Shown piece after piece: positions 5,754 to 25,700 of a DNA stretch of 64,000 bases. Under the pieces are notes generated by a model that made no database searches, was not told where the DNA came from, and saw only the letters and a list, made by a program, of their open reading frames with translations. The position numbers were made by a program, and so were the translations under genes. The stretch lies in the IMG/VR virus record IMGVR_UViG_3300042386_001233, positions 1 through 64,000 of that record; one strand, written 5' to 3'. The first letter of the stretch is position 1, and each line of letters opens with the position of its first letter.

Positions 5754-6739
5754 CAACACAGTTTAACCATGTACAATCAATAGGTAAAAAAGATAGATTA
5801 TCAGGATTAGAAGATAATCTTAAAAGCTTTTTAGACTGGTCATTTTTACAAATTGGAGGATTTGTTAATGTAAATATACCAACTTCTGGTATTAGTGCCA
5901 CTAAAGGCACTGGATTTCATATTATGAAAAATGTTAACGAGCCATCTAAACCATCAAAAACCTGGGAAGCCCCAAGAAAAGATTGGGTATATGAGAATAG
6001 TTCATCGTTAAATAATCCGGCATCCATATCATATAATCCATATGGTTCGGTAGCGTCAGGACTAAATACTTCTCCAATAGCTTTTTCTGGAGTTTATCTT
6101 AATAGCACATTCTTACCAGCACCATCAGGAAGTGGCAATTATACATATTCTGTTAATTATCCACTGGGACATATAACTTTTCAAAATAACGTAGCATCAA
6201 CTAGTAACGTAACAGTATCCTATAGTCATAGATATATTCAAGTATATAAATCTAGTGATTCTGTATGGTGGAAAGAAATTCAGAAAGAGACATATACTCC
6301 ACAAATTAAACCTAATGGGGATTACAGTATAACTTCCAACCACAGAGCGCAACTTCCTTGCATAATTATTGAATTAATTCCTCGTACCGAGATGATACCA
6401 TACCAGCTAGGAACAACAGAGAATATTGTTATTCAAGATGTGTTTTTACATGTTTTTGCTCAAACGGCTAATCAAAGAAATAATATAATAGATACTTTAT
6501 TGCTTCAAAAGGATAATAGCTTTTGGTTATATGATGTTAGTGCAGTCGTAAAAAATAATGCTTATCCATTAAGTCGTAATGGAGATATTAATCCTGGCGG
6601 ACAGAACTATAATACTCTAGGTTCTAACTTTAAGGATCATTGGAGTACTATTAAAAATGCTACTCTTAGTGAACTAAATAATCTGAGTGCAAGCTTATAC
6701 AATGGTATAGTTAGATGGTCAGTAGAGATTTTTCCATAA
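5750..6739 (+). CDS. Putative tail terminator/completion protein with N-terminal insertion
   Basis: 329 aa. C-terminal QLPCIIIELIP..PYQLG..VIQDVFLHVFAQTANQRNNIIDTL resembles tail-terminator folds; synteny fits. Confidence 0.5.
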   Translation: MTTQFNHVQSIGKKDRLSGLEDNLKSFLDWSFLQIGGFVNVNIPTSGISATKGTGFHIMKNVNEPSKPSKTWEAPRKDWVYENSSSLNNPASISYNPYGSVASGLNTSPIAFSGVYLNSTFLPAPSGSGNYTYSVNYPLGHITFQNNVASTSNVTVSYSHRYIQVYKSSDSVWWKEIQKETYTPQIKPNGDYSITSNHRAQLPCIIIELIPRTEMIPYQLGTTENIVIQDVFLHVFAQTANQRNNIIDTLLLQKDNSFWLYDVSAVVKNNAYPLSRNGDINPGGQNYNTLGSNFKDHWSTIKNATLSELNNLSASLYNGIVRWSVEIFP

Positions 6740-6772
6740 TAGATATTTATTCAGGACAAGATAGGAATTATT

Positions 6773-7516
6773 ATGATTAATACAAAATGTAAAGAATGTA
6801 TGTTCTCACATTCTGATGGAGAAAAGAACGACAACCCAATATGCTCTAAGAATATTATAGAACAAATAAAGGACATTAAAAATATTAAACAAGAAGATGG
6901 ATTCAATATAATAGAAAATTATGCTTGTAGATATGGTTTTTCCAAGCAAATTTATGAACAGCATAAAGAACAGTGGGATCCGCAGGACTTTGAAAATAGA
7001 ATGTTGGAAAATAGTAGAATAAGGTATTATCTATTATTAGATTGCTATGATCCTGATCTAGATTTTAATCATATATTACAACAGATACCAAAGCTAAATA
7101 TGCCTCCTAAGTCTGTATCTTTTATGTTTCGGAGTTTAAACTTTAGGCCCTTTGTTCAAGAACATCAAGATTTTTTATTATCTAACTACAAGAATATTCG
7201 CTGGAAGGCTCATAACTTTTTGGAAGAAATGTCTTTAGAAGAAGGTATTGATCATATTTTATCTACGAATGCAAAAAATAATGACACATCAATTTTTTTG
7301 GTGTATAATGCTAAAGATTTACAATTTCTGGATCGTGACGTTAACACTATTAACAAAAATATGATTTTATATCAATCACCAATGATAGCGATTATTGACC
7401 GCAATAATACATTATATAGATTAGCTATGTCGTTTGATAATTATAAAGTGGCTAAAACTTTGGGTCCAAATTTGATCCCAGTACTGACTCAAGAAAGCAA
7501 CATAGTATACTATTAG
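6773..7516 (+). CDS. Hypothetical protein with N-terminal Cys cluster
   Basis: 247 aa; CKEC...C...C near the N-terminus; no family recognised. Confidence 0.6.
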   Translation: MINTKCKECMFSHSDGEKNDNPICSKNIIEQIKDIKNIKQEDGFNIIENYACRYGFSKQIYEQHKEQWDPQDFENRMLENSRIRYYLLLDCYDPDLDFNHILQQIPKLNMPPKSVSFMFRSLNFRPFVQEHQDFLLSNYKNIRWKAHNFLEEMSLEEGIDHILSTNAKNNDTSIFLVYNAKDLQFLDRDVNTINKNMILYQSPMIAIIDRNNTLYRLAMSFDNYKVAKTLGPNLIPVLTQESNIVYY

Positions 7517-7531
7517 TATTTCATATTATTT

Positions 7532-7537
7532 GGTGTA
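7532..7537 (+). promoter_or_regulatory. GGTGTA motif, candidate late-promoter element
   Basis: Intergenic, 43 nt before the first tube-like gene. Confidence 0.4.
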
Positions 7538-7574
7538 AAGTTCTAATACACGCACAATACAATGGGAGTTTCAA

Positions 7575-8789
7575 ATGTCTATTAATAACAGAGTTTATTA
7601 CGCATCACAAGCAGTACAACTAAGACCAGTTAGCCCAGAAGGAACATCATTTGGTTACTGGTATCATCCATTAGCAGTTCAAAGTGTTGGAATGACAACC
7701 AACTTCACTACTGAACAAACTTTCCAATTAGGTACAGTAGAACTTTACGACAATGTTGAAACTATTCCAGAAGTAGAAGTTACAATCAATAAGGTTATTG
7801 ATAGCACAGCACCCCTTTATCTGATGTGCATGGGTGGAAGCGCAGGAATACCAGGAGCACAGAATAAATCACTAGTATCATTATCAAATAATAGAGTTCA
7901 TTTTCGTTTAGGTATTTATGGTGATGATAAGCAATATATTTCAGGTAGTGCAGGAAGTAGCGTATTATGCTCTGGCATGTATCTATCCAGTTTTAACTAT
8001 ACCTTTCCAGTTGACGGTAATGCCACAGAAGAGGTTACATTAGTAGGAAATAGCAAGCTATGGAATACTGGCAATATTCCTGGTGTTCAAAGTGCTAATT
8101 TTGCTGCTGGAACAATGTTTGCTCCAAATGCTAATATTGGAGGAATAACTCCTTCACAGAATAGTGGTATTTTGCGCAGGCAATATCTTAATGTTCAAGG
8201 GTCTGTTCTTCCAACTGGTAGCGGCGGAATTAGAACCCCTAATGGATCAAACGTTCTTCCTCACGTTCAAAATATTACCATTAGTTCTGATCTTGGTCGT
8301 GAAAGTATTAATCAGTTAGGTAAGTTTGGACCATATTGTCGTTATGCTACTTTTCCAATTGAAGTAACAAGCGAATTCGAAATTATTGCCCAAGACGGAG
8401 ACGGAGTAGATGTCAACGACTTCAAGAACGATGTGTTCTGTGGAACCTTAAAGAAAAATCTAGTATACAAAACCATTAGTGTTGCTATATGTGATGATAA
8501 TCATACAAACAATAATAATACTATGATTTTTGATCTTGGAAGTAAAAACACTCTAACATCTGTTAACTATACTGGTGGAGATACCGGCGGCGGTAATGCT
8601 ACGGTGTCATATAGCTTTAGAAATTTTAATAATTTCTTCATAAACGCTAGTGGATCATACAGGTCCGGTATTGCTTTTGCCGATAATGGTGGCGCAGTAT
8701 CTGCTCAGTCTATAGATCTTGTAAACACTGAAGATTCGGCACCAGTCTCATATTTAGATTATAATTCTGGAGATAATAATAATGTCTAA
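7575..8789 (+). CDS. Tail tube-like protein, paralog 1 (two tandem tube-like domains)
   Basis: 404 aa. Shares FPVDGNATEEVTLVG, YATFPIEVTSEFE and LTSVNYTGGDTGGGNAT with the next two genes; lies between the neck and the TMP; internally duplicated. Confidence 0.65.
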   Translation: MSINNRVYYASQAVQLRPVSPEGTSFGYWYHPLAVQSVGMTTNFTTEQTFQLGTVELYDNVETIPEVEVTINKVIDSTAPLYLMCMGGSAGIPGAQNKSLVSLSNNRVHFRLGIYGDDKQYISGSAGSSVLCSGMYLSSFNYTFPVDGNATEEVTLVGNSKLWNTGNIPGVQSANFAAGTMFAPNANIGGITPSQNSGILRRQYLNVQGSVLPTGSGGIRTPNGSNVLPHVQNITISSDLGRESINQLGKFGPYCRYATFPIEVTSEFEIIAQDGDGVDVNDFKNDVFCGTLKKNLVYKTISVAICDDNHTNNNNTMIFDLGSKNTLTSVNYTGGDTGGGNATVSYSFRNFNNFFINASGSYRSGIAFADNGGAVSAQSIDLVNTEDSAPVSYLDYNSGDNNNV

Positions 8790-10020
8790 TAAAAGAATTT
8801 TTTACGCTTCACAAAGCATCAACCTTCAGCCTGTATCAACTGGCACTGCTAATCCAATAAATTATAGAAACGCTACTCATTATGTGAAGTATGGTGATGG
8901 AGATAGTTGGGTTGTTCCACTAGGTTTACAAAGCGCTGGTGTTTCAACAACGTTCAATTCTGAGCCAGTATCACAACTCGGTACCCTCCAGATTTATGCT
9001 CAAACAGAAACTTCTCCAGAAGTTGAAGTTACTTTATCAAAGATATTAGATGGCACAGCTCCATTATATTCTATTTGTACAGCTAAAGTTGATCCATCTG
9101 ATGATACAATATTAAGCTCAATCAATGCTGATCTTACTCAAGTGGCTACTAACATGGTTAATGTTCGCATAGCAGTAGCTAGCGATACGGGTGCAGCAGC
9201 AACCGGAACAGCAAAGCACCACACTCTTTGTGAGAGAATGTACCTATCCAGCGTTTCTTTCACATTTCCTGTTGACGGAAATGCCACAGAAGAGGTTACG
9301 CTTGTTGGAACAAATAAGTCGTGGGGCTCTTCGGTAACATTACCGGGAGATGATACTGCTACTCCTTATGGAACTGGTACTGATGCTATTGTTCGTAGAC
9401 AATATATTTCAGTAACAGGAACCGCAACATCTGCTACTCGTGATGAGTATGACAGAATAGACCAAAGCGATCTGCCAGATAATAGTATTTTACCAGTAAA
9501 GTTACCTAGATATAGTATTAATGGAGTTAGTCAGCCCCGCCTACAGAATATTACAGTTAATGCTAGCTTTAATCGTGAAAATATTAATGAGCTCGGTTTC
9601 TTTGGTCCATATTACAAATATACAACTTTCCCTCTTGAAGTTACCAGTGAGTTTGAAGTTATTGCTGTTAGCGGAGACCTCGTCAATGCTAATGATTTTG
9701 AATATCAAGACAACGAGGGGAACGCCGCCTCAGCATTCGATTGCACAACCAAGTATACCAATTTAGCAAATGAAGAAATCGTTATTAAAGTTTGTGGTAT
9801 TACAACAAATGATTCTTTATATCTTGATCTTGGTAAAAAGAACAAGCTAACATCTGTTAACTATACCGGAGGAGATACTGGTGGTGGCAATGCTACGATA
9901 ACTTATAGTTATCAAACATTTAATAAGTTAAACGTAATTCCAGTAGGAACATATGCCGAGTATGTTACCCACGACGGATCAACATCAACAACAGCTACAC
10001 TGCAAAATTATAATTCATAA
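8782..10020 (+). CDS. Tail tube-like protein, paralog 2
   Basis: 412 aa; same conserved blocks; 8-nt overlap with paralog 1. Confidence 0.65.
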   Translation: MSNKRIFYASQSINLQPVSTGTANPINYRNATHYVKYGDGDSWVVPLGLQSAGVSTTFNSEPVSQLGTLQIYAQTETSPEVEVTLSKILDGTAPLYSICTAKVDPSDDTILSSINADLTQVATNMVNVRIAVASDTGAAATGTAKHHTLCERMYLSSVSFTFPVDGNATEEVTLVGTNKSWGSSVTLPGDDTATPYGTGTDAIVRRQYISVTGTATSATRDEYDRIDQSDLPDNSILPVKLPRYSINGVSQPRLQNITVNASFNRENINELGFFGPYYKYTTFPLEVTSEFEVIAVSGDLVNANDFEYQDNEGNAASAFDCTTKYTNLANEEIVIKVCGITTNDSLYLDLGKKNKLTSVNYTGGDTGGGNATITYSYQTFNKLNVIPVGTYAEYVTHDGSTSTTATLQNYNS

Positions 10021-10037
10021 TTATAGGAGATTTTTAA

Positions 10038-11138
10038 ATGGCGAATAATAATAGAGTTTTTTACGGTTCGCAGGTAGCTCAACTAATGCCAGCCACTACT
10101 GGTAATAACTATACTAGATGGTATCAGCCACTAGGCGTACAAAGTGTTGGATTCACTAGCACTTTTGAAACAGAACAAACCTTTCAGCTTGGAGCTATTG
10201 ATATTTATTCCATTGCTGAGAATGTTCCTAATGTTGAAGCAACAATTTCCAAAGCTTTAGACGGAACATGTCCATTGTACTTAATGTGTATGGGTGGACA
10301 AAGTGGAGTTGCTGGTGCAAATCTAACTTCATTTTCAGCTACAGAAATGAATAATAAGGGTCTTGGTGCTTTAGCAAATAATACTGTTAATTTTAGACTC
10401 GGAATATATAATGATACATCTTCTAATGTTGCTGGAACAACTAGTGACTGGGTTCTATGCTCAGGAATGTATTTATCAAGTTTAAGCTTTACTTTTCCTG
10501 TTGATGGTAATGCAACTGAAGAAGTAACGTTAGTTGGTAATAATAAAAGATGGAGTCAGAACGGCGGCATAGGAGGCAACATGACTGCCGTTGCTCCAAC
10601 AGGCGAATATGCTACAGCCAAGAAACTAGCTCGTCGTCAATTCATTAATGTGAATGGTTCAGTTATGCCAACCGGTAGTGGTGGTCTCCCAACAGGACTA
10701 GCTACTAACATGGAATTGCATTTACAAAATATTAGTATCAATGCTGATCTTGGAAGAGATCAAATTCTTGAGCTAGGATCATTTGCTCCGTATCATAGAT
10801 ATGCTACATTCCCAATTGAAGTTACTAGCGAATTTGAAATTATCGCAACAGAGGGTGACTACGTTAGTGCTAATGACTTCCTATTCCAAAGCGGATGTTC
10901 AGTTCGTTACACCAACATTGGCAACTTCCCTATACAGCTACAAGTATGTGGCAGTGGTACCTCAGATGCTTTAGGCACTTTAGATATTTACCTTGGTAGT
11001 GGTAATCAATTAACATCTGTTAATTATACCGGTGGTGACACTGGTGGTGGTAATGCGTCAGTTTCATATAGCTTTAGAAATTATAATGATTTCTATATCA
11101 AGGCTGTTCATTCGTATTCTGGTGTTCCATCAGTATAA
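10038..11138 (+). CDS. Tail tube-like protein, paralog 3
   Basis: 366 aa; same conserved blocks; GGAG SD-like site upstream. Confidence 0.65.
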   Translation: MANNNRVFYGSQVAQLMPATTGNNYTRWYQPLGVQSVGFTSTFETEQTFQLGAIDIYSIAENVPNVEATISKALDGTCPLYLMCMGGQSGVAGANLTSFSATEMNNKGLGALANNTVNFRLGIYNDTSSNVAGTTSDWVLCSGMYLSSLSFTFPVDGNATEEVTLVGNNKRWSQNGGIGGNMTAVAPTGEYATAKKLARRQFINVNGSVMPTGSGGLPTGLATNMELHLQNISINADLGRDQILELGSFAPYHRYATFPIEVTSEFEIIATEGDYVSANDFLFQSGCSVRYTNIGNFPIQLQVCGSGTSDALGTLDIYLGSGNQLTSVNYTGGDTGGGNASVSYSFRNYNDFYIKAVHSYSGVPSV

Positions 11139-11214: not shown

Positions 11215-11388
11215 ATGGAAGAATTATTGAGTGTGGTTGGTCGTTTGTATGTTGATATGCTTCATGCACAGAAGTATATTGAGAGTATGCAAAACCAACT
11301 CAAAGATAAAGATACGGAAATTATAGCATTAAAATCAAAATTAGCAGGTTCGCCAAAAGACAAGGATAAAAATGCTGAAGAGGTATGA
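11215..11388 (+). CDS. Small coiled-coil protein (57 aa), not in the ORF track
   Basis: MEELLSVVGRLYVDMLHAQKYIESMQNQLKDKDTEIIALKSKLAGSPKDKDKNAEEV*; AGGA-containing leader; ATGA overlap with 11385. Confidence 0.7.
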   Translation: MEELLSVVGRLYVDMLHAQKYIESMQNQLKDKDTEIIALKSKLAGSPKDKDKNAEEV

Positions 11389-12395
11389 GTCAGGAACTAG
11401 AACAGTTTATATATCGTATTATAAGTGGTAAGTTATTATTTAATCATAATAATAAGACATATATTCTTGTTCCTCCTAAGCCCATAGTAAAATATAGGGC
11501 TAATTTATTATATGTTTCTATCTTAAATGATGAAAAATACAATGAATGGATAAGAGCAGAAAATTTGGATAGATATATGACCTTTTTAGAAGTTTGGAAT
11601 AATGAGATGACTAGCTTTGTAGAGAGATCAGAGAAGCAGATAGAGGACTTGAAAGTATCTCTATTCAATAATAGACTTAATAATAAAATGACAACAAGAA
11701 CTCGTAATCAACTAGCTAATCTCAGAAGAAAACTATCCGAACTACAACTAATACGACAAACATACTATGCTCAAACCTTAGAGGGTTATGCTGAAAGCAT
11801 TAAGTATGAGTATATTATTACCAGTACATTATTCTATAATAAGAAAAAAGTATTTGGTAAATTTGGATCATTACAAACATCATATCAAGACTTTACATCA
11901 GTAGTATCAGAAATCAACACCCATGCTTTGCAAACACCAGATTATAGAAGAATTGCAAGATCAGAATTATGGAGATCATTTTGGACAATAGATAAAAACA
12001 ATATTTTTCCTGGGCCAGTTTCATTGTGGACAGAAGAACAACGAACATTAGCCGGATATAGTTCCATGTATGATAGTGTACATGAACATCCAGAAAAGCC
12101 CAACGACTCAGTAATTGATGATGACGATATGCTTGATGGTTGGATGATTAGTCAACGTCGCGCTATGGAGAAGAACAAACTACAAGAATCTATGCTTAAA
12201 ACTAATTCCAAGCTCGGTAAAGCACAAGAAGTATTTATCTTTACAGATAACGAGCAAGGAGTCAAAGAGGTTATGGGTATGAATTCAGAAGAGGCAAATT
12301 TAGCTATTGCACAACGATCTAACATACTAAATAAAGGGCAATCAATAGACCATGCCCGCTTGCCAGACGTTCAAAAAGATTTACTAAATAAATAG
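11385..12395 (+). CDS. Putative tail assembly chaperone (shared G-like domain plus extra C-terminal domain)
   Basis: 336 aa. The N-terminal ~165 aa align with the 12690 gene; lies between the tube genes and the TMP. Confidence 0.5.
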   Translation: MSQELEQFIYRIISGKLLFNHNNKTYILVPPKPIVKYRANLLYVSILNDEKYNEWIRAENLDRYMTFLEVWNNEMTSFVERSEKQIEDLKVSLFNNRLNNKMTTRTRNQLANLRRKLSELQLIRQTYYAQTLEGYAESIKYEYIITSTLFYNKKKVFGKFGSLQTSYQDFTSVVSEINTHALQTPDYRRIARSELWRSFWTIDKNNIFPGPVSLWTEEQRTLAGYSSMYDSVHEHPEKPNDSVIDDDDMLDGWMISQRRAMEKNKLQESMLKTNSKLGKAQEVFIFTDNEQGVKEVMGMNSEEANLAIAQRSNILNKGQSIDHARLPDVQKDLLNK

Positions 12396-12405
12396 GATAT
12401 AAAAT

Positions 12406-12693
12406 ATGACAAATTATCAACAGTTACTCTACGACGTAGAAACAAAGTTCAAAACAACAATGATTGGCTCATTAGCCAGATTTGAAGAAACATTTGGTCA
12501 TCTATGGGAAGAAGAAGGACCTGATCAGCAAGAATATTTGGAATCTTGGGAATATACTCGAAATGCTATTCTTAACAACGGGAACAAGCAAATGAGAGCA
12601 GCATTAGATGATTTGTCAGACGCTATATTGGGGTCATATAAAACAAAATATACTTACAAGTTCAACAATAGGAATCATGGAGATAAACAATGA
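12406..12693 (+). CDS. Hypothetical helical protein (95 aa)
   Basis: ATGA overlap with the next gene; no family recognised. Confidence 0.65.
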   Translation: MTNYQQLLYDVETKFKTTMIGSLARFEETFGHLWEEEGPDQQEYLESWEYTRNAILNNGNKQMRAALDDLSDAILGSYKTKYTYKFNNRNHGDKQ

Positions 12694-13592
12694 AGACAAA
12701 GACTTTCAAGGCCACTATCGACGGTAAGGAAAGAGAATTTTTAGTCAAGACACCATCTTTAACTGATCAGAGAGAAGGTCAAAAGGTTTATAATCAAGCC
12801 TTTACTGATGCTATCAAGAGTAAAAGTGTTGTTAGGGCTAAATTAGATGATTTATTAGAAGATCAAGGACTATGGAATGATGAGAAACAGGCTAAGTTCA
12901 CATCACTACAAAGAGATCTGCTAGACGGTGAAAAAAGACTAGCAAAGGGCGGGTTTAGTTTGAACGAAGCCAAAGACCTTGCTATTAAAATGAAGGGCGT
13001 AAGAGATGAAATCAGAGATCTAATCAGTGTTAGAACGTCTTTAGACAACCATAGTGCCGAAGGTCAAGCAGATAATGCTAGATTTAATTATCTGGTATCC
13101 GTATGCGTGGTGTATAGTGATAACAAAGAGCCATATTTTAGGAATATGGAAGACTATTTAAATCGAGCTACTGAAGAAGTTTCTTTATTAGGTGCTCAAA
13201 ATTTGGCTAACATGATTTATGGATTGGACAATGATTATGAGACTAATTTGCCAGAAAATAAATTTTTGAAAAAGTATAGATTCGTTGATGATAAGCTAAG
13301 ACTAATTGATAAGAAGGGCAGATTGGTAGATGCTGATGGCAGACTAATAGACAGCAGTGGCAGATTTATTGATGAAGAAGGCAATTTTGTTGATAAATAT
13401 GGCAATAAGGTTACTTCAGACGGAGATTATATTGTTGAAACAAAACCGTTTTTGGACGACAATGGAAATCCAGTTGTTCTAGAGGAAGAGAAAACAGATG
13501 CACCAGCAACCACTGAGACACCTCCAACACCTCCTCCTGCCCAACCATCTCCTACAGAGGCTCAACCCCCAGTTCAGCCAACTAATAGTTAG
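12690..13592 (+). CDS. Putative tail assembly chaperone with 7-residue DxxGxx repeats and Pro-rich tail
   Basis: 300 aa; immediately upstream of the TMP; paralogous to 11385. Confidence 0.55.
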   Translation: MKTKTFKATIDGKEREFLVKTPSLTDQREGQKVYNQAFTDAIKSKSVVRAKLDDLLEDQGLWNDEKQAKFTSLQRDLLDGEKRLAKGGFSLNEAKDLAIKMKGVRDEIRDLISVRTSLDNHSAEGQADNARFNYLVSVCVVYSDNKEPYFRNMEDYLNRATEEVSLLGAQNLANMIYGLDNDYETNLPENKFLKKYRFVDDKLRLIDKKGRLVDADGRLIDSSGRFIDEEGNFVDKYGNKVTSDGDYIVETKPFLDDNGNPVVLEEEKTDAPATTETPPTPPPAQPSPTEAQPPVQPTNS

Positions 13593-13703: not shown

Positions 13704-16700
13704 ATGGCTACAGCTTTTAATTTGACAGCACAACTTAATTTACGCGGTCCAAATAATGTTAACAAGATTGTTGGAGACATTAAGAAACAACTATCTGGCA
13801 TAACTGCTAATGTTAACTTGAAGTTGGACCCTAATGTTGCCAAGAACGTTAAGGCTCTTGATGCTTCGTTAAAATCGTTAAATTCTACATTATCTAGAAC
13901 CTCTACGACAGCAACTTCTGCAGCATCTGCGATATCTTCTTTTGGTAGGGCTGTTAATTCTGTTAGCATAAAAAACATACCGTCACAAATTAATGCCACG
14001 GTATCTAGTATGAATAAGCTAAATAAATCTAGCGGAACCATTGGACAGTCTTTGAATGAAGCAGCAACGGAGATGCAGGAGTTCGGTAAACAAGCAGGAT
14101 TAGCAATTAGACGATTTGCTGCATTTACTGCTGTTACTGGAGTTATTTATAGTTTAACTAATAGTATTAATCAGGGTATTCAGGCTTTTATAGAATATGA
14201 CAAAGAATTAGTTCGTTTACAACAAGTCACAGGTCAAACTGCCGGAGGCTTAAAGCAACTACAAAATTCAATTTCTCAATTAGCAACTGGTTTGGGTGTT
14301 AGTTCAAAAGAATTAACAACAGTATCAGTTACACTAGCACAAGCCGGTTTAAGTGCAAAAGATACCGAAAGAGCCTTAAGAGCATTAGCATTAAGTTCAC
14401 TAGCCCCATCATTTGACGACATGAATGAAACGGTAGAAGGTTCTATTGCTTTGATGAGACAGTTCGGCATTAGTGCTGGACAATTAGAACAAGCCCTAGG
14501 TTCTGTCAACGCTGTTGCTGCTGCGTTCGCCGTAGAAGCCGATGACCTAATTACTGCTATTCAGCGTACCGGCGGTGTGTTTGCTACTGCTAGTAAAGGC
14601 GTTAGTGAAGGAACAGATGCTCTTAATGAATTTATCTCGGTGTTTACTAGCGTGAGAGCAACCACTCGTGAAAGTGCAGAAACTATTGCTACTGGTTTAC
14701 GTACTATCTTTACACGTATTCAGAGAGGTAGCACAATTGATGCCCTTAAGGAGTTCGGTGTTACTCTAACAGACTCAGAGGGCAAATTCGTTGGAGCCTA
14801 TAGAGCCGTACAATTACTAAGTGAAGGATTGTCTAAACTAGATCCAAGAGATATTAAATTTTCTAGAATTGTAGAAGAGTTGGGCGGCTTTAGGCAGATT
14901 GGTAAAGTTATTCCTCTTATCCAACAGTTTTCTGTTGCTCAGAACGCTCTTAAGATAGCACAAACAGGACAATCTTCTTTAGCTAAAGATGCAGCAACAG
15001 CACAATTGTCATTAGCAAATCAAATTCAAAAAGTTCGTGAAGAATTCTTTGCGCTGTTTCGTGAAATTGGACAAAGCAAAGGCTTTCAATCCTTACTCAC
15101 TGGAGTATTAACACTAACAAGAGGACTAATCAAGCTTGCTGATGTTTCAAAGAGTTTGCTACCTGCGTTGAGTGTCGTTTTAGCATTTAAGGGTGCTAGT
15201 GCTTTAACTCAATTTGCTAGCGGTTTCAGCAAGGGTTTCAGGCCGGGTGGTGGTAAACCAGAAAAAGAAAGACCACGATTCGCAGACGGCGGAAGGGTTA
15301 GAAGATTTGCTACTGGTGGTGTAGTGCCCGGTAGTGGTGACAGAGATACTGTTCCAGCTATGCTAACTCCTGGTGAGTTTGTGGTGAGAAAACAAGCAGT
15401 TAAAAGTATTGGAACAGCACATCTACATAGAATAAATAAGCGAGCTAAGGGTGGCCCAATTACAGTAGAAAAATTAAAAGATATTAATCCCAATGCTGTT
15501 CAGCCTGACTATAGAAATACAGAAGAAGCAAAAAATAAAGTAGGAGAAAAAGACCAAACTTGGAGCACATACAGAGATCAAGGCAGGAGAGGGAAGGTCA
15601 GGTCAACAGCTGTTAAATATATGCAGCCAAGAGACGAAGTATACGGAGATGTAGAATACGTACCTATTCCTGATCCTAATAGGTCAGAAGTTGAAAAATA
15701 TTTTGGCAAGATAGTTCTTAAAAAAGGAATTAAGTCTATCAATCCAAAAGATAAGAGAATAAGTACTGCTTATGAAAATTATGCTCAGGATAAAGTAAAA
15801 ACAATAGGAGCTCGGTATAGTGGAGATTATGATCCTTTAGATTTTGAAACCGGAGATGTTAAATTCTATAGTTCTGAAGAAAATATTCAAAAATATGTTT
15901 CGATAAATAAAGTTCTTTCAAAAAGACTCAGACATCAAAATAAAGATAATAGAATTAAATGGCAACCAAACTCTCCAGAACAAAAAGAGTTAGAGCCAAC
16001 AACAATATATCATCCAACAGACTTAACGGAAAATAATAATTTAAAGAAAAGAATTTCAGACTGGATTTTATTATCACAAAATCAAAGAACAACTCAGGCG
16101 ATTAGAGAGGGTGACTCTTTTAGTTTTGGTGGATTAGTTCAAAAATTTGCCGAAGGAGGAGAGGCTGCTAGGATTAGGAGAGTTGGAATTATAGATAGTG
16201 ACGTATTGCGAGATAAGATTAACGCTGAAAAAGTTGCTCAAGGAATGGAGTCAATCGGATCAGATAGTATACAAGACTATACCATACAACTAGCCAAGCT
16301 AGGCGTACAAAAAAGAAAGTCTGGTGACCTCAAAAAGTTTAGAGTTATTGCTGGAGCTGCTGGTAGTGGAAAGAGCAGCTTAGCTACTGGAGTATCTGCT
16401 AATGATAACGCTACTTTGCGAAAAACTATTAGATCTCATATTATAACTCCACAAGATCTGGATAGTGTAGATGAAATTTTAACTATCACAGCAAATGTTA
16501 GTGATGCAAAATTAGAGGGCTATCTTAGAGATGCAGATAGAACATATACCGTCTCATCCTCTACTAAGGCCGAGCAAGATCTAATAAAAAGAAATAAAGA
16601 ATCCAGAGACATCACTGGACAAGGACTTTACGGCAGAGAACCAGGGAAAACAAAGGGCGTTCCTGCAGATTTTGGAGTAGAAGAAGCAACACTAATCGAT

Positions 16701-19700
16701 CAACTAGGATCAAAAAATGTTGTACTAGGAAGAAAAGAAGATGCTGAAGGTAATCTTACAAATAGATTTAGAAGAAAAAGAGAAGATGAATTACCAGAAA
16801 TAGTACAAGCAGAAGGCTTCTATACTGGTGGTTTTGCTCCTCCAACAAGAGGTCACAGAGGCGCTTTTGATACATTGCTAGCAAATGTAATTGCCAAAAA
16901 TCCAAAGGCAACACTAAAAGATATTTTGGTTTCAGTAGCTCCTAATGTTGCGATGGTCGAAGGAAAAGAAGGACTAGAGCACGCTGCTAGATATGGTATT
17001 TTTGATGCTGATTTTAGATCATTATTAGCAGATGTAAACTTTAAAGGAGCTATGATCTCTCAGGATGCACAGTCTACTCCTGGAATACTTCCCAAGGTTA
17101 TGGAAGTTCCTAGCGAAAACAATCGTAGAAAATTTGCTCGACTCAAAGGAGCGATGGCTATTACTTCCGGAAAAGAACAGGGAGTTTTAGGAAAATACGA
17201 GAGAGCAGGAATTGAGGTTACTGACATTCCAAGAATAGAGGATATTAGTGCTACTAAAGTAAGAGAATTATTATTTAGTCAAAATTATACTGAACTTGAT
17301 AAAATAGTTAATCCTGAAGTTGGGGCAATACTTAAAGGTAATCAACCACAGCTTAAAAATAGATCAGTAATGGTTCCTGTTTTATTAGAAGAGCTTCATA
17401 AAGCAGCCGAAGCTAATACTGTTTTAGCTAACCAAAAAGCAGATGATATACTTGCTAATGCTCCTGGCGGTCCATATGCTAATGTTAGTAAAAAATTAAA
17501 AACAGAACACCCAGATATTGCAGCACAAGTTAAGTCTATTAGAGAACAAAGAGATCAGTTTAAGAAGTCTATTTCTGGAGCTAAAGCCCATTCTATTATT
17601 AGTGAATTAGCAGCTGCCTATCCTGAAATTTATGGTATTGATCCTTCTCGTAGAGCAGCAACAGCAGCCGCTAGCATATCAGCAGAAGACGCTAGGTCTC
17701 ATCTAGGAGATAGAGTAAAATCGCTAGTGTCAGGAAGAGGCGCAGCAACTCCAGAACCTTCTCTGCTAGAGAGTATCAAGCAAAATGTTACCAAACAATT
17801 AGCAATTCCAAAGGGTTCAGGTACTTTACCCACAGACTCTAAGACAATTACTAGCGCCTTCTTAAATACCAAGATACCGTCTGATCCAACATTCGGTATG
17901 TTTTCAGGCAAGACTATAGATCCTGGTATAGTAAAGAAAGTTTGGAGACAAACATATCCAGGACTATCAGAAGATAAGACAGCAAGCTATATTGCTTTAA
18001 AAGAATGGCTAGAAGCACAATATAATACTCGTACCGGCGCCAAAACTGAAAAACTGTCTCAGGCCATTCAAGAATCTAAAATGGTTGGATTGGTTGGTAT
18101 GCTACCAATCGGACACGAAAAACTATCTGGCCCATTTACATGGATGCTGGGTAAAAATGCTGCTGGCGAGGATGTTTCCGTTACTGCTTCAATTATAGAA
18201 AGAGGATTGGGCAAACAATACGAGGAAGAGATTAAAAAAGCACAGAGTCACGCTGAACAAGGATCAGAACTTCTAGCTTCTGGACTAGCGTCTAAGATGA
18301 AAAAACGACCAGAGTCTTTAAGATCTCTTGATAAAGCTCAGCTTGAAACTTTAGGTCAGGGAAATATTGAAGGAGCATATGTTGAACAGGCATTAGCCAG
18401 ACTATGGGCCAATTTAGACAATGTTAGTACCAGAACTCGACCAATAGACTACCCAGACGGTCTCGGAGAATCTGCTGAACTATTTCCTGGCATATCTCCA
18501 ACTATGCCGACAGAAGTTAAGAGAACAATTAATAGTGATAGTAGAAGTGATGCCATAGAAGAATTCCAAAGGTATTTCAGACTTATTCATGCAATACCAG
18601 AACCAAAAGCCAAGAAAGAAGCAGTTAAAGCATTAGCTTCAGGCGGAGAAGTACAAAGATTCATGGCTGGTGGAGTAGCAACCAAAACCAGAAAACCAAA
18701 AGAAGTTTTTGGAACTGGAGAAACAGCATTCCCATCAAGAATATCAAAAAAATATGCCGAAGAACAACATTCAGCTAGTGAAAGCTTAAGAGCTAAATTA
18801 TCATGGGATAAGTATCCTAAAGATGAAAGAATAATGGTTAACGAAGATAAGGTACAAGAAGCCTATCAACAACCATTTGATAGAGATAGGTTTACCTCAT
18901 CATTTAAAGAAAAAATTAGTCGTGACTCGCTCTTTGAGAGAATGTCAGATTTTGCTAAGTTTATAGGACTGCCACAAGAAGACTTATCTCTAGCACTACC
19001 ATTACAATTGGATTTTGGAGCAAGCTCAAGAGGGGGTGGGTTGGGAATGTTCTCTGCTGCTGAATTCGGAAAAGGAGCATCTGGAATTAGGCCATATGAA
19101 GGCTATGATCTATCTAAATTTGGATATGGAGAAAAAGAAAAGCAAGAATCTTATGGATTAGAAAAACTTATAGCAGCAAAAGAAAAAGAAATAAAAAAGA
19201 TTAGAAAAACTCCTACTGAAACTTTTGATGATGGTAGTTTCTCTTTTGACAGTGAGGCATTTCAGAAGACTTATATTGAGTTAGATAATCTTAAAAATAG
19301 ATTTTTTAGATTAAAAGACCTAAAACGTGAAGCAGAAAAGGCGGCCCTTGCTGAACAAAATACCATTTCCTCAGCTACTGGTCGTGGAACCATCGGCTTT
19401 GCTCCTTCTATGGGATATGCTTCCACCACACAGAATCACTCGCTATATCATGAAATGACACATCAGCTATTTGAAGGATTAAGAACAAGATCAGCAGAAA
19501 GCTTTACTAAATATAGAGATAGAGTATCGTCTTTATTCTCTGGAGATAATGACGATTTAGCAGATGCTTTTGACTCTTTAACGGCAGTAACAGCAGGCGG
19601 CGGATATACTAGTGCTGATGTTGTATATGGTAGAAGTTATAAGTCAAATAACTTAAGTCAAATACTTTCAAGCTATTATCGTCAGAATCTTGATTCTTCT

Positions 19701-22700
19701 AGGGGCACTACTCCTATTCCTGAAGATATAACAAAAAATCTTGCTAGTTTAAGTACTCAAAGTACAGCTGCTAAAAGAGCTAGAGAGTATAGGCCAATAA
19801 ATCCTCAAGTTAACGAAGCTTTACTTCAAGGAGGTGCTAAGTTTGGAATGACTCAAGAGAAGATTAATAGAATGGAAGATAATGGTAAAGAAGAATTCTT
19901 AACAACTTTAATAGAAAAAGCTCCTCAGCTTGATCAAAATTTACAAGGGATTTTAGATTCTACCTTAACAGAACTATTAAGTGGTGCTGGAATTCAAAGA
20001 CAAAAATATGCTTCAGGAGGCAAAGCTTCAAGAAGAGTAGACTTTGAAGCCGGAGTAGGGCAGTCACCATTCGGAGGTTCGGTATCAAAAAGATTAAGTC
20101 AATCCATTTACAATCTGCAAAAGAACACCGGACTAAGTGATTCAGAATTCAATGAAATTAAAAAGACGGCAGATACATACGGATACAATGAAGAAGAATT
20201 TAAAGAATATTTAGCAAAAAGAATACAAGAGAAGAAGAACAAAGAGGGGTTAAGAACTAATCCATCAGCACTAGCACAGCAGTTGATGCCACAAACAAGG
20301 GTGTCAACACCTAGACAGCTAGCATTAGCACAAGCATTAAAAGACACCTCTAATGATATCGGATATAGACCATCTACTTTAGAAACAATAGCTCAAGCAA
20401 GAACAGACGTTGGTAACGCTACTAGATATGCCGTCGGCGGTATTGCTAAAGTTGGCAAGAAGGAAGACAAACAGTACGGTCAAATTAGCATCACTGAAGA
20501 CGCCGGAATGATTAATGTTGGATATCAAAAGGGTGATAATAGACAAGGATATGCTACTGGTTACAAGATGAGGAATAATCTATATTATGTTGGATTGTCT
20601 AAAGCGACAAAAGGCTATGGACCAAGATTGTATGACGTACTGATGGAAGCTGTAACAGAAAAGGGCGCCATGCTGACATCCGATAGGTCATCAGTCAGTG
20701 AGGATGCAAAACGAGTATGGGAATATTATTTTAAAAATAGGGGTGATGTTAAGAAAACTCCACTTAAACCATCTGATTGGACTGTTAATTCGAATTTAAT
20801 AGATCCAAAACTTTACGGCAAAAAAGAAACTTGGCCCCCAGCAACTGATCCAGCTTGGACATTACAGACAGGTTATAGTAAATCTCCTAAATTAATAACT
20901 AATACTAATGAGGTTATAAGAAAGAGATCAGGTGGTCGCCTTAGTTTTGAAACTGGTGGCACTGTTCCAGCTTTAGTTAGTAATGGAGAAGCTTATATTC
21001 CTCCTAAGATTGCTAAAAGAATTGGTTATAGTAATCTTAATCGTATGAATCAAGCTGACCGTAACGGAATGAGCAAGTTCTCTAGTGGTGGTATTAGTGT
21101 GTTTAAAGGCCCTGGTACCGGTACTAGCGATAGCATTCCTGCTAATTTGCCAGTTGGTAGTTTTATTCTTAGAGAGAAAGCTACTAAGGCTTTGGGTTTT
21201 AATAAAGGAGGTGCTGTACCAGCACAAAGATTTGCTACTGGAGGTGGCGTAACAAGCATGATTATGGAATGGCTGTCATCAGACATGACTGCTAGAACCA
21301 AACCCAAAATGGCTCCAAGACCTGATGTTGTAAACAGGGCGAGTGTTGTTGCTTCTAATGATACCACCAAAGCTTTAGATATTCTTGTTAAATCTCTTAA
21401 TCAATTAGGTTTAAGTGCTGCTAATTCTGCAGATATTTTAAATAAGGGTGGGCAAGTTAGTTATAAAACTATACAAAAGGCTTTAGCTGAAGATATTAAA
21501 AGATTAAAAATTTCAGGAGCAAGCATACAAAGCATAGTTGCAGCAGAAACTACACTTGCTAATATTCGTAAAAAGAGTAAAGAAGAAGTTACTAAACAAA
21601 AAAATATACAAGGATTAACCAGTGCTAGAGGCAACTCTTCTACTAAGATTGTTGGAGGTCAAACAATTGGGGACCTACAAGCTGGTTCTGGTGCTGGACA
21701 ACAAGCAATAGAGACACAAGCCCAGATGCTTGCTGCAGCAAGAATCAGAAGAAGAGGAGGAAAGGTAACAGAAAAACAACGATCTGAAATAATGGAATCA
21801 TCGTACATTGATTCTGCTTCTAGAATTACTGGAATTAAAAAGAAAGAATTTAAAGCTGCTGGAATTAGTGGTGGAGATATTCAAAAATATATAGCTGAAT
21901 CCATGAAGGATCGCAAGAGCTTGGCGCAGATGGATAAGCAGCTAATAGCACTCAAAACTAATGAGTTGACGAATAGCGCTGCCTACATAGCCGCCTCTAA
22001 CGCAGAACAAAAAAGAATGTTGACAGAAGTTCAACAAGCAACGAAAGAAGAAATATCAACTCGCAGAAAGATTATCAACGATCTAGCTGCTCAAAATGGA
22101 ACTAAGGGAGTTGGTGCTGCTGGGTTGAGAGATACTAGAAATAGTCCCATACTTAATCAGATAAAAGGATTTATAAAATCTCCTGGTAAAGTGATGGGTG
22201 GAATATCTGCTGCTGCTGGACTAACTGCTGGTGCTTCTGATATGATTGCGAAAAATATTTATAATATGAGCACAACAGAAGGCCAAGGTAAAGCAGCAAA
22301 AACATCAGCAGCTATTCAATCTTCTGGTACAATTCTTAGCACCGGAATGGCAGCAGCATCACAGATGGCAGCTATACCAGTTATTGGTCCCTATGTTGCT
22401 GCTCTTACTGCTGTTGGAACAGCTGCTGCGGCTGCTGCTGATTATTTTTATGATTTTACCGGTGCTCAAAAGGCTGCCACAGTAGAATTTGAAAGATCAG
22501 TAAGAGCTAAAGAAATTGGAATTGCTATGGATGGTTTGGATAGAGCATTCCAAAATTTTGAAAAAGATATGGGTAATATAACCTTACAAAAGGCTCTAGA
22601 ACAAGCTATTGGTAATACTTCTTCTTTACAAATTAAAGATAATATGGCAGAAAGAGATAATGCCAAAGCAGAGTTTTCTCTAAAGAATAGAAGTTGGTCG

Positions 22701-25700
22701 GATATTTTTAGTGGTAACTTTAAGGGTTCTGCGCAGATGGATGCTCTTGAACAAGGAGCTATGGATAGTGAAATGTCTCAAAAATTATCGCCAATATCCG
22801 ATAAGGCTATGGCGTTATATGATAAACAAATTAGTAGCGGAAAAAGTATAGAAGATATTGTTAATAATGTTCGCACAGGAAATAAAGACGCTGTTAATGC
22901 TGGCGCTGCCGTTGCTTTTAATGCTAATCCCAAATTGTGGTCAGAGTTAGAACAAAAGGTTAAAGCATCAGGAGACGCTTCAGAAGCTAATGTTCTGAAG
23001 ATTAAACGAGGAATTGTTGCTAGAGAACTCTTAACCAATGCAGAATTACAAGCAGCTGTAAAGAGATCCAAATTAGAAAGAGATATGGAGGCTTCTAATA
23101 GAGCTGGTCGTAGATTAGCTGAGACTTTTGATCATATAAGTGAAACTATTGATCAGTCAATTCAGAGAATGCAACGAGAGTCTGAAATTCGTCAAGCACA
23201 AGCTAATGACAGAGTAGAAGCTAGAAGAGGAAATGCCGGTTTTGATGAAAGAGCTGTTAATAATAGAAACGTTGGAGTATTAACAAATCCAAAAGCATAC
23301 CAAAATGATCCTAGACGCATAGAAGAAGCTATTAGAGCAGGAAGCAGTGGTATGTCCCCAGAGCTTGCTCAAAAAATGGCTGGCGGAGCTAGACTAGAAG
23401 CTACTTTGCCTAATGTAATGAGAAATGCGATATCTACAGAACTTAAGAGTAATGCTAGTTTAGGTCTTGATGAAGCAGCTGATGCTGCCAGAAGAAAGGG
23501 AACAGAAGCGATTAGAAATTCTGGATTATCAGAAGCTGATCAAAAAGTTGCTATAGATAAATTAAACGCAAGAATAGAAGATGAAAAAAAGAAAGTACAA
23601 GATAATGAAAAGGGAACCCCAGCAGAACAAGTTGATTCTTTTACTGACTCTATAAGTGATCTTGGTCCAGAAATAGCTAATATATTTGGTAATGCAGGCA
23701 AAAAATTAGATGATATTATCCAAGCCAGACAAGGAATCTATGATACTTTTGCAAAGAATCTTCAAGCCGCTTCAGAAGCTGCTAAAAAAGCACGAGAATT
23801 TTTCAGTAAAGCAAGAGATATAAGATATGACGCTGGAATGGACTTGAGAGAAGCCCAAACTGGCGTAGGAGAAAGCTTCTCTGAGGCAAAAGCTAAATCT
23901 GATAGTAGTATTGCAAGATTAACTGGCGGGGTTACTGATCCTCAAGCTATTGGTAGAAATATTGATGCTTTAATGGCACGGCGTGACCAGCAAATGAAGG
24001 ATAGGGATGCTGCACTATCAAATCCCAATTTAACACAAGATCAACAGAAAGATGCTGCGACTAAATTTGCTAAAGATATTCAGGCTACTAATAATGCATT
24101 AAACGATAATAGAGAAGCATTAGACAAGTTGGCTAATAGCGCTGAAGTAGCGCAAAAAGCTCTAGACGAAGTTAAGAATATTAGAGGATTACAACAAGAT
24201 AGAGAAAACTTTGTTAATCAATTGCTTACAAACACTCCAGAAGAAGCAGACAAACTTAATCAAACCTTTATTAGACTTCAGCGCAACTTGTCTGGTGGAT
24301 TAAATAATGCCTCTAATCAAAGAGATGCCCGCAATGCTTTTAATGATACATTACGTCGCACAGGAAATCTGAGAGAAGCTACTCGCGCCGGAAATACTGT
24401 ATTAGCAGACCAAAGAAAACAAACCCTTCAGTTGATGCAAGATCCTGGATTTAGGGGCATGATGACCCTTAATATGAAGAACCAGGGAATGAATGATCAA
24501 CAGATAGACAAGCGATTCAGAGACCAAGAAGGTATGTTGATGCAGCAAATGGCTATTGAGAGTGGATTGATCAATAATCCAATGGTTAGACAAGCCCTTG
24601 CTGCAAAACAAGACCCTAATGCTGATCCGGCCATGAAACGTGCTGCCGATCAATTCTTGCAGGCCACTGGTTTACAGGCCAAAGCTTCTGAGGAACAAGG
24701 TCGATTAGAATTAGCTAATGTACAGAACTTGCTCGTAACAGCTACCGACGAATTAAGAATGTCTATAGATACCTTAACAACAACCATTAATGGTTCGTTG
24801 GGTAAAGATGGAGAAAGAGTTCCCGGTGTTGCTGGGCCTGTGGTTCCTGTTCCAGCCGGGGCCAGAGGGGTGGCGAGACCACCTCGTCCCATGGCTACTG
24901 GTGGAAAAGTTAAGACTCAGTATGCTAGTACTGGTCAATTAATAGACTTTTCTCCCAAGGGGACTGATACTGTTCCTGCCATGTTAACTCCTGGAGAATT
25001 TGTTGTTAATGCCAGATCGACCGCCAAACATCTACCATTACTAAAAGCTATTAATAGTGGGGCTGGAGTTGATGCTACTTCTAACATGAGTAAAGGTGGA
25101 GTTGTTTATTTGGATAATGGTGGATTAATAGACGAGTTTAGAAAAATAGATGCTAATAAATCCAATTTTTTAGAAGTTGGCGAAATAGATCTTAAAATGA
25201 TTCAATTATTAGATAGAGATAAAGATAATAAAGTTTCCTTTGGAGAATATTCTTCAAGAGTAAAGAGCGATGGTAGTAGTGGATCTTCAAGATCTGGTTC
25301 AGGATCATCGGTTAAGAGTGGATTTAAAGCTCAAGATATGAGTTTTGAACAGTACTATAATAATAGAGCACAAAAATATGCAAAAAGATATCAAGGTACT
25401 GGAGACGAAGTACCAAGAGACACAGATAAATTCGCTAACGGAGGTATGGTTACTCCATATTATTTAGCAGAAGGAACAAATAGACCGCTATCACGACCCG
25501 TTATGGTAGCACTACCTCCCAAAAAAGATCCTATTGAGACTGCAAGAGCTGCTCGTAAACAAGGAGTACCAACTAAGAGAAGGCCATCTTTAGTTCCTGG
25601 AGATCCTAGAGCAAAAGATGCTGAACCTAGCTTTTTTAGATTAGACCTCAATGAAGACGGTATTTTGGACAGAAAAGAAGGATATCCATACCAAGACTTA

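What the first reader, a model, noticed from the sequence alone, without database searches (positions are those of the whole stretch)
7575..11138. Three tandem tube paralogs, each internally duplicated: a possible heterotrimeric six-domain tail ring
Each protein contains two copies of the same unit. In paralog 1, VQSVGMTTNFTTEQTFQLGTVELY (7677) aligns in register with VQNITISSDLGRESINQLGKFGPY (8265), and YLSSFNYTFPVDGNATEEVT aligns with LTSVNYTGGDTGGGNATVSYS. Domain-duplicated tube proteins forming trimeric pseudo-hexameric rings are established for T5 pb6 and P74-26. Three different two-domain paralogs give exactly six tube domains, enough for one fully asymmetric ring, or for a segmented tail of three ring types. 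I do not know of a described example.
Basis: partly seen in the sequence, partly recalled or inferred. Interest (0 to 1): 0.85.

Follow-up and report, generated by a model that had tools for sequence, protein, structure and literature searches.

The report
Three paralogous double-domain tail tube genes
An uncultured jumbo phage with a tail predicted to be about one micron long carries three conserved sister copies of its two-domain tail-tube gene where its relatives carry one, which fits (but does not prove) a tube ring built from three different subunits.

Summary
ORFs 7575-8789, 8782-10020 and 10038-11138 are paralogs (41-52% identity). An AF2 model matches T5 pb6/p140, P74-26 gp93 and SH-Ab15497 MTP over its full length.

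The genes sit upstream of a 6454-aa tape measure in a genome of at least 244 kb.

- **Copy number.** In about 160 related loci it is 1 or 3, never 2.
- **Origin.** The three orthogroups form one clade nested among single-copy genes. Their subtrees are congruent across 11 genomes.
- **Selection and expression signals.** Purifying selection is similar on all three (dN/dS 0.06-0.25). Each gene has a GGAG site before its start, and the T1 stop overlaps the T2 start.
- **Tail length.** The triplication is not tied to it: a single-copy relative has a 6560-aa tape measure.
- **Co-gained gene.** A clade-specific 247-aa gene with a weak GT-A-like fold appears only where there are three copies.

Whether the three proteins form a 1:1:1 heterotrimeric ring, three kinds of homotrimeric ring, or one major and two minor species could not be tested. 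I favour the heterotrimer at about 0.4.

Multiple paralogous major tail proteins do exist in cultured actinobacteriophages (Damascus gp17/19/20), with no known explanation. I rate this a new variant of a known kind.

The parts
7575..8789 (+). T1, tail tube protein paralog 1 (404 aa). It has two tube domains plus a C-terminal tail of about 40 aa rich in S/T/N/D. Its post-duplication stem is the shortest, so it is closest to the single-copy state.
   Evidence: ORF; paralogy; orthogroup clade 100/99; GGGAG 6 nt before the ATG.
8782..10020 (+). T2, tail tube protein paralog 2 (412 aa). It is the most diverged: stem 0.82 substitutions per site and 13 fixed changes at ancestrally conserved sites. 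It carries three paralog-specific insertions.
   Evidence: Its start overlaps the T1 stop by 8 nt, with GGAG upstream.
10038..11138 (+). T3, tail tube protein paralog 3 (366 aa), the one modelled. Domain 1 is about aa 1-185 and domain 2 about aa 225-366. Each domain has a long beta-hairpin (aa 34-73 and 228-270).
   Evidence: AF2 pLDDT 78, pTM 0.80. Foldseek PDB: T5 p140 5.5e-10, SH-Ab15497 MTP 2e-9, T5 pb6 8e-8, P74-26 7e-7. Foldseek BFVD. ESM Atlas neighbours carry PF18906 or PF26461.
6773..7516 (+). g247, a clade-specific 247-aa gene directly upstream of T1. It has a Cys-rich N-terminus and a Rossmann-like alpha/beta domain with weak GT-A or nucleotidyltransferase fold resemblance. It is present only in genomes with three tube genes.
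   Evidence: Presence/absence. Only 52 homologue clusters, all at 41% identity or more. AF2 pLDDT 86. Foldseek E~2e-4, TM 0.35-0.46. No Pfam or PHROG family.
11215..13592 (+). Four conserved genes between the tube genes and the tape measure (57, 336, 95 and 300 aa). They occupy the position of tail assembly chaperones. Their function is inferred from position only.
   Evidence: ORFs. The same order is seen in 3-copy and 1-copy relatives. No family hits.
13704..33068 (+). Tape measure protein, 6454 aa.
   Evidence: PF10145 PhageMin_Tail, E 2e-21. Relatives have tape measures of 7279, 6560 and 3606 aa.

Best explanation
Shown:
- T1, T2 and T3 are the major tail tube proteins of an uncultured jumbo phage (at least 244 kb). 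No sheath gene was found in the window, so the tail is most likely non-contractile.
- Each protein is a fusion of two tail-tube beta-sandwich domains, like T5 pb6 and P74-26 gp93.
- They arose by two duplications in quick succession in one lineage of a family that otherwise has one such gene.
- All three have been kept since, in fixed order, under similar purifying selection.

Inferred:
- Solved tubes made of such two-domain proteins are C3 rings of three subunits.
- I therefore think the three paralogs most likely fill the three positions of each ring, as a T1-T2-T3 heterotrimer with six distinct tube domains.
- Assembly would be by sequential monomer addition around the tape measure, as proposed for P74-26.
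- The result would be a tube of about 240 rings, made of three different helical strands instead of three identical ones.
- Once lateral and loop-socket interfaces had diverged in a paralog-specific way, no copy could be lost. This is the kind of ratchet known from crenarchaeal PCNA1-2-3, cited from my own knowledge.

The confidence value applies to the heterotrimer step. That these are two-domain tube proteins I hold at about 0.9.
For: - **Fold and duplication:**
- **Position upstream of the tape measure:**
- **Three equals the subunit number of C3 tubes:** P74-26, T5 and phiCbK, per PMC10034513.
- **Copy number is 3 or 1, never 2, in about 160 loci:**
- **Tree:** the three orthogroups are each monophyletic (100/99 to 100/100) and together form one clade (93/95). 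Their subtrees are congruent over 11 genomes. The branch between the two duplications is short (0.09)..
- **Database counts:** orthogroup cluster counts among the best 120 hits are near equal, 46/38/36.
- **Selection:** dN and dN/dS are similar for the three, 0.06-0.25.
- **Expression signals:** there is a GGAG-type site before each start, the T1 stop overlaps the T2 start, and there is no internal terminator signal above chance. This is compatible with similar expression.
- **Paralog-specific changes:** long post-duplication stems and fixed changes at sites invariant in single-copy relatives. Several lie in the N-terminal arm and the two hairpins, which make intra- and inter-ring contacts in P74-26.
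Against: - There is no direct evidence of co-assembly or stoichiometry.
- The concentration of paralog-specific changes in the hairpins is not significant (Fisher p=0.08). It would fit stacked homotrimers equally well.
- No ring model or coordinates were available to map interfaces.
- RBS similarity is a weak proxy for protein abundance.
- Known precedents for tube and sheath paralogs are mostly positional specialists: T4 gp19/48/54/3 and Afp/PVC (my own knowledge), and T5 pb6 versus p140.
- A relative (L104) has a second tube-like gene fused to DUF285 repeats. That looks like a minor decorated subunit rather than a ring partner.
Confidence: 0.4

Rival explanations
1. Each paralog forms its own homotrimeric ring, and the tube is a stack of three ring kinds. 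The stack could be periodic (T1 on T2 on T3), in long segments, or mixed at random.
For: - Homotrimerisation is the ancestral state in the single-copy relatives.
- Fixed paralog-specific changes include hairpin-loop sites. In P74-26 these loops make nearly all the inter-ring contacts.
- All three genes are conserved and similarly constrained.
Against: - Nothing in this model requires exactly three copies, or explains why no 2-copy genome is seen.
- A periodic stack needs three specific ring-ring interfaces, while the hairpin tips (QLG..Y motifs) are among the best conserved blocks across the paralogs.
- No three-part organisation of the tape measure was found by self-BLAST.
Confidence: 0.25
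2. One paralog is the bulk tube protein. The other two are low-copy specialists, for example the first rings on the tail tip (as p140 is in T5) or the last rings under the terminator, or sparsely incorporated decorated subunits.
For: - The best PDB hit of T3 is the T5 baseplate-tube protein p140, a two-domain tube paralog used once per tail.
- T4 and eCIS use tube and sheath paralogs as initiators and terminators (my own knowledge).
- L104 carries an extra tube-domain protein fused to DUF285 repeats.
- T1 and T2 carry extra tails and insertions.
Against: - Single-copy relatives share the whole set of neighbouring tail genes and manage with one tube gene.
- All three paralogs have comparable ribosome-binding sites, tight gene spacing and near-identical dN.
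- The p140 match is hardly better than the matches to pb6 and gp93.
Confidence: 0.25
3. The copies are redundant or alternative tube proteins, kept for dosage or used under different conditions or hosts. There is no structural interdependence.
For: A tail of about one micron needs roughly 700 tube subunits, so extra gene dosage could help. This is inference from the tape measure length and the 40 A rise in P74-26.
Against: - Dosage copies would stay similar or be lost sporadically. Here the stems are long (0.29-0.82), there are fixed paralog-specific residues, and 11 genomes show no loss.
- Single-copy relatives with a 6560-aa tape measure need no extra copies.
- There is no sign of gene conversion.
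Confidence: 0.07

Closest known systems
P74-26 gp93 tail tube protein (PDB 8ED0; PMC10034513)
   Same: - One chain holds two tail-tube beta-sandwich domains, each with a long hairpin.
- The Foldseek match covers the full length (E 7e-7, TMq 0.51).
- It belongs to an extremely long non-contractile tail with a giant tape measure.
   Different: - Sequence identity is about 12%.
- P74-26 has a single tube gene forming homotrimeric C3 rings. Here there are three paralogs.
- The host and environment differ: a thermophile there, an uncultured source with 36% GC here.
T5 pb6 (tube) and p140 (baseplate tube protein) (PDB 5NGJ, 9INY, 7QG9)
   Same: - Both are duplicated tube domains forming trimeric pseudo-hexameric rings, and are top Foldseek hits (5.5e-10 to 1e-4).
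- T5 also uses more than one two-domain tube-fold protein in a single tail.
   Different: - pb6 and p140 are very distant from each other and have different positions and copy numbers.
- pb6 carries an Ig-like domain.
- The three proteins here are close paralogs (41-52% identity), adjacent and equally constrained.
Duplicated or triplicated major tail protein genes of actinobacteriophage clusters AU, AM, BI, DJ, CC and EL (e.g. Microbacterium phage Damascus gp17/gp19/gp20, OQ995438)
   Same: - Two or three paralogous 'major tail protein' genes lie in the tail module of a siphophage and are conserved across clusters.
- In Damascus they are 42-51% identical over about 215 aa, the same divergence range as here.
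   Different: - There is no detectable sequence relation to this family.
- The shared region is shorter, about 215 aa, and the C-terminal extensions are very unequal (286, 609 and 255 aa).
- The genes are separated by another gene.
- In the papers read here they are only annotated and flagged for further study. I found no structural or stoichiometric account in the searches run.
Crenarchaeal PCNA1-PCNA2-PCNA3 heterotrimer (own knowledge, not tested here)
   Same: A two-domain protein that forms a trimeric pseudo-hexameric ring became three paralogs, each taking one fixed place in the ring. PMC10034513 itself likens the tube ring to sliding clamps.
   Different: It is an unrelated fold and function, and a single ring rather than a stacked polymer. 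The analogy is evolutionary only.

Membership tests
Two-domain siphophage tail tube proteins (T5 pb6 / P74-26 gp93 type) | Two tandem tail-tube beta-sandwich domains in one polypeptide | tested here: met
   The N and C halves align by hhalign at P=3.4e-4. Foldseek matches to pb6, p140, gp93 and SH-Ab15497 MTP cover the full length with probability 1.0, while single-domain tubes cover only about half of the model.
Two-domain siphophage tail tube proteins (T5 pb6 / P74-26 gp93 type) | Gene in the tail module, upstream of the chaperone-position genes and the tape measure | tested here: met
   The order is T1-T3, then four small or medium ORFs, then a 6454-aa ORF carrying PF10145. The same order is found in relatives.
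Two-domain siphophage tail tube proteins (T5 pb6 / P74-26 gp93 type) | Assembly into trimeric C3 rings stacked into a tube | not testable with these tools
   No multimer prediction, model coordinates or virion data were available.
Pfam PF18906 Phage_tube_2 | Score above the family's gathering threshold | tested here: inconclusive
   T1, T2 and T3 give no Pfam hit even at E 0.1. A distant member of the same HMMER family (P0204) scores 30 bits against a cut-off of 27. The ESM Atlas neighbours are mostly PF18906 clusters.
Contractile-tail (myophage / eCIS) inner tube | A sheath gene adjacent to the tube gene, and baseplate wedge genes | tested here: not met
   No sheath or baseplate-wedge family appears in any large ORF of the 64-kb window by Pfam or PHROGs. 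Full-length structural matches are to siphophage tubes.
Obligate heteromeric ring made of paralogs (PCNA1-2-3-like logic) | All paralogs co-occur in every genome that has any of them | tested here: met
   All 3-copy loci carry T1, T2 and T3 in the same order. No 2-copy locus was found. The apparent partial sets (L039, L097, L117, L139) all sit on contigs that end before the full T1-T3 set could be read.
Obligate heteromeric ring made of paralogs (PCNA1-2-3-like logic) | 1:1:1 stoichiometry and direct lateral contacts between different paralogs | not testable with these tools
   This needs multimer modelling, virion proteomics or cryo-EM.
Actinobacteriophage duplicated major tail proteins | Sequence homology to that protein family | tested here: not met
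   hmmsearch with the TTP profile against Damascus gp17-gp21, with filters off, gives no hit better than E 0.4.
GT-A glycosyltransferases (for g247) | GT-A fold plus a conserved DXD or nucleotide-binding motif | tested here: inconclusive
   Fold resemblance is weak (Foldseek E~2e-4, TM 0.35-0.46). There is no Pfam hit. Only single Asp residues (D90, D189) are conserved, and no conserved DXD is seen in 47 sequences.

The most novel reading that the evidence does not exclude
Every ring of the tail tube is an obligate T1-T2-T3 heterotrimer, giving six non-equivalent tube domains and no rotational symmetry. This would be the first phage tail tube built from three different major subunits. It would have arisen by the same duplication ratchet that turned homotrimeric sliding clamps into PCNA1-2-3. 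The co-gained g247 may act on or with the new subunits.
Probability: 0.4. Interest if true: 0.8.

Novelty: new variant of a known kind. Interest (0 to 1): 0.6.

Why it matters
Tail tubes are textbook homo-oligomers. Symmetry, hexameric or pseudo-hexameric trimeric, underlies current models of how tubes assemble on the tape measure and how the ejection signal travels along them.

A clade that has kept exactly three diverged copies of a protein whose known relatives form three-subunit rings offers a natural test. It can show whether a viral polymer can become hetero-oligomeric by duplication and entrenchment, and what that does to assembly order, flexibility and surface decoration.

The single-copy sister lineages share the rest of the tail module, so they provide a clean comparison.

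The same phages encode tape measures of 6454-7279 aa. These predict tails as long as or longer than that of P74-26, which PMC10034513 describes as the longest known.

Tried and rejected
**Family and database searches that gave nothing**
- Pfam and PHROGs on T1-T3 and their neighbours: no family.
- Profile search of PDB sequences: no hit.
- tblastn of T3, and of a distant family member, against 50,697 GenBank phages: no hit. No cultured relative was found.

**Ideas tested and rejected**
- Three copies are needed for an extreme tail length. Rejected: a single-copy relative has a 6560-aa tape measure, and others have 3606, 2435 and 1958 aa.
- Conserved blocks reflect gene conversion. Rejected: they differ at synonymous sites.
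- Paralog-specific changes are enriched in the hairpins. Only a trend: odds ratio 2.4, p=0.08.
- Internal promoters or terminators point to unequal expression. The counts are no higher than in shuffles.
- The tape measure has a three-part repeat structure. Self-BLAST finds none, only a short motif recurring at irregular positions.

**Searches that failed or returned little**
- Locus search with a distant-member alignment failed for lack of a conserved stretch.
- The P0258 scan found nothing.
- The look-up of the L054 protein found no record.
- Literature hits for 'heterotrimer' together with 'tail tube' (Jabs, phiKZ, JBD30) concern fibres or baseplate wedges, not the tube.

**Not attempted**
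- Covariation (DCA) mapping of the inter-subunit interface. Model coordinates cannot be read and only 11 paired genomes exist.
Full report
**1. What is there**

The + strand between 7575 and 11138 holds three back-to-back ORFs: T1 7575-8789 (404 aa), T2 8782-10020 (412 aa) and T3 10038-11138 (366 aa). None has an internal stop.

The three proteins align over their full length at 41-52% identity, with BLASTP E values of 1e-90 to 1e-130. Differences are mostly insertions:
- 12 aa, about 20 aa and 9 aa in T2;
- about 10 aa in T3;
- about 13 aa in the linker of T1, plus a C-terminal tail of about 40 aa.

**2. The internal duplication**

One sequence compared with itself gives only E~4. When the N and C halves of a 119-sequence family alignment are compared as profiles, they match with P=3.4e-4.

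Structure supports this:
- An AlphaFold2 model of T3 (pLDDT 78, pTM 0.80) has two beta-sandwich units, each with a long hairpin (aa 34-73 and 228-270).
- Its best PDB matches are full-length alignments to the known two-domain tube proteins: T5 p140 (5.5e-10), SH-Ab15497 major tail protein (2e-9), T5 and DT57C pb6 (about 1e-7) and P74-26 gp93 (7e-7, TMq 0.51).
- Single-domain tubes (monocin, phage 812, SPP1, Sf11, eCIS) align to only about 160-175 columns.
- BFVD returns many other 300-400-aa viral tube proteins of the same build, at 10-16% identity.
- ESM Atlas neighbours are PF18906 and PF26461 tube clusters.

T1-T3 themselves hit no Pfam or PHROG family, no PDB sequence and no GenBank phage. 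One distant member of the same HMMER family does pass the PF18906 threshold.

**3. Context**

Downstream come four conserved ORFs (57, 336, 95 and 300 aa) and then a 6454-aa ORF carrying the PhageMin_Tail domain. This is the tape measure.

No sheath or baseplate-wedge family is found anywhere in the window.

Identical or near-identical sequence lies on contigs of 244-248 kb, so this is a jumbo phage. Given the absent sheath and the siphophage tube matches, the tail is most likely non-contractile.

At the usual 1.5 A per tape-measure residue (my own knowledge), the tail would be about 0.97 um. With a P74-26-like rise of 40 A per ring, that is about 240 rings, or about 720 tube subunits.

**4. 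Relatives**

A full-library HMMER search finds 751 clusters at 50% identity, almost all full-length at 300-450 aa. The two-domain build is therefore old and widespread.

I fetched 77 viral loci and 80 metagenome loci and counted tube homologues with a profile:
- Every locus has either three tandem copies or one. No locus with room for more has two. The only apparent partial sets (L039, L097, L117, L139) are on contigs that end before the full T1-T3 set could be read.
- The 120 best database clusters split 46/38/36 among the three orthogroups.
- One single-copy relative (L104) has an extra 1026-aa protein with an N-terminal tube double-domain fused to DUF285 repeats.

A careful ML tree of 61 proteins shows the following:
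- T1, T2 and T3 are each monophyletic (100/99, 100/100 and 100/100).
- T1 and T3 are sisters (95/84).
- All three together form one group against the single-copy genes (93/95).
- The three subtrees have the same shape over 11 distinct genomes.
- The branch between the two duplications is short (0.09). The stems after them are long (T2 0.82, T3 0.56, T1 0.29).

This points to two duplications in quick succession, a burst of change, and then stable retention.

Within the clade, all three paralogs evolve alike. dN is 0.10-0.33 and dN/dS is 0.06-0.25 for the same genome pairs. The invariant blocks differ at synonymous sites, so they reflect selection rather than gene conversion.

**5. What the triplication is not**

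It is not a requirement of tail length. A single-copy relative (L080) has a 6560-aa tape measure, another has 3606 aa, and two have complete tape measures of 2435 and 1958 aa. The rest of the tail module is shared gene for gene.

**6. A gene that came with it**

The 247-aa ORF at 6773-7516, directly upstream of T1, is present in every three-copy locus and in no single-copy locus. Its family has only 52 clusters, all from this clade.

Its model (pLDDT 86) has a Cys-rich N-terminus and a Rossmann-like domain. That domain weakly resembles GT-A glycosyltransferases and sugar nucleotidyltransferases (E~2e-4, TM 0.35-0.46). No conserved DXD motif is present.

Because the co-occurrence reflects a single evolutionary event, it is a lead rather than proof of a functional link.

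**7. Mechanism**

In P74-26 the ring has three subunits arranged head to tail. The N-terminus and Loop1 contribute to the lateral interface, Loop1 and Loop2 make nearly all the ring-to-ring contacts, and growth is by monomer addition.

Of the 123 columns conserved in 50 single-copy proteins, T1, T2 and T3 carry 5, 13 and 10 fixed paralog-specific changes. Eleven of the 20 mapped sites lie in the two hairpins and two lie in the N-terminal arm. The hairpin excess is not significant (p=0.08), and without coordinates I cannot assign the sites to lateral or axial contacts.

Each gene has a GGAG-type site before its start, and the T1 stop overlaps the T2 start. No internal promoter or terminator signal exceeds chance.

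These facts fit co-expression and interdependence. They do not decide between three models:
- one heterotrimer per ring (my preference, about 0.4, mainly because three is the ring's subunit number and no two-copy state survives);
- three kinds of homotrimeric ring (about 0.25);
- one major species plus two minor species (about 0.25).

**8. Comparison with what is known**

Two-domain tube proteins and C3 tubes are established for T5, phiCbK and P74-26.

Multiple paralogous 'major tail protein' genes are also on record. A duplicated major tail protein is conserved in actinobacteriophage clusters AU, AM, BI, DJ, CC and EL. In Microbacterium phage Damascus I find three such genes, gp17, gp19 and gp20, at 42-51% identity over about 215 aa. 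They are unrelated in sequence to the present family. In the papers I read they are only annotated and flagged for further study, and my literature searches turned up no structural account.

What is new here is a set of three close paralogs of the two-domain type, in a lineage where the single-copy ancestor state is still represented. I rate it a new variant of a known kind. It is of good but not exceptional interest until stoichiometry is measured.

Noticed in passing
window 6773-7516 (+): g247 is a clade-specific 247-aa gene found only in genomes with three tube genes. It has a Cys-rich N-terminus and a Rossmann-like domain that weakly resembles GT-A glycosyltransferases and nucleotidyltransferases. 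T1 and T2 have S/T/N-rich C-terminal tails that could be substrates, but that link is speculative.
   Followed up: partly
window 13704-33068 (+); L001 16152 onward; L080 13601 onward: The tape measure proteins are 6454 aa (window), 7279 aa (L001) and 6560 aa (L080). At 1.5 A per residue these predict tails of about 1.0-1.1 um. That equals or exceeds the P74-26 tail, which PMC10034513 calls the longest known.
   Followed up: partly
window 13704-33068, tape measure residues about 2475, 3754 and 6198 (plus a variant in the first 600 residues): A short motif (..TDTVPAMLTPGEFVV.. and variants), preceded by Gly-rich 'ATGG' stretches, recurs at irregular intervals along the tape measure. Self-BLAST finds no other internal repeat.
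   Followed up: partly
L104 8241-11321 (protein P0129): This is a single-copy relative that carries an extra 1026-aa protein after the chaperone-position genes. The protein has an N-terminal two-domain tube module fused to DUF285 repeats. It may be a decorated minor tube subunit.
   Followed up: partly
L167 (Microbacterium phage Damascus OQ995438) 5785-9874: Three genes annotated 'major tail protein' (gp17, gp19, gp20) are paralogs, 42-51% identical over about 215 aa, with very different C-terminal extensions. The genome announcement mentions only two.
   Followed up: partly
window 87-2021 (+): A 644-aa protein with 11 DUF5122 beta-propeller repeats (Pfam E 1e-156) lies at the head of the structural block. 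Its role is unknown.
   Followed up: no
window 33089-59698 (+): Downstream of the tape measure there is a run of very large ORFs (1169, 830, 771, 1250, 516, 676 and 2137 aa). Only scattered domains are recognisable (FGE-sulfatase-like, fn3). These are presumably tail-tip and fibre proteins, and most have no family.
   Followed up: no
T1-T3: FPVDGNATEE block in domain 1 and GGDTGGGNA(T/S) block in domain 2 (e.g. window 8001-8048 and 8553-8600): The most conserved block of each domain contains an Asn-Ala-Thr/Ser tripeptide, which has the form of an N-glycosylation sequon. It is also conserved in single-copy relatives that lack g247, so it is probably structural.
   Followed up: no
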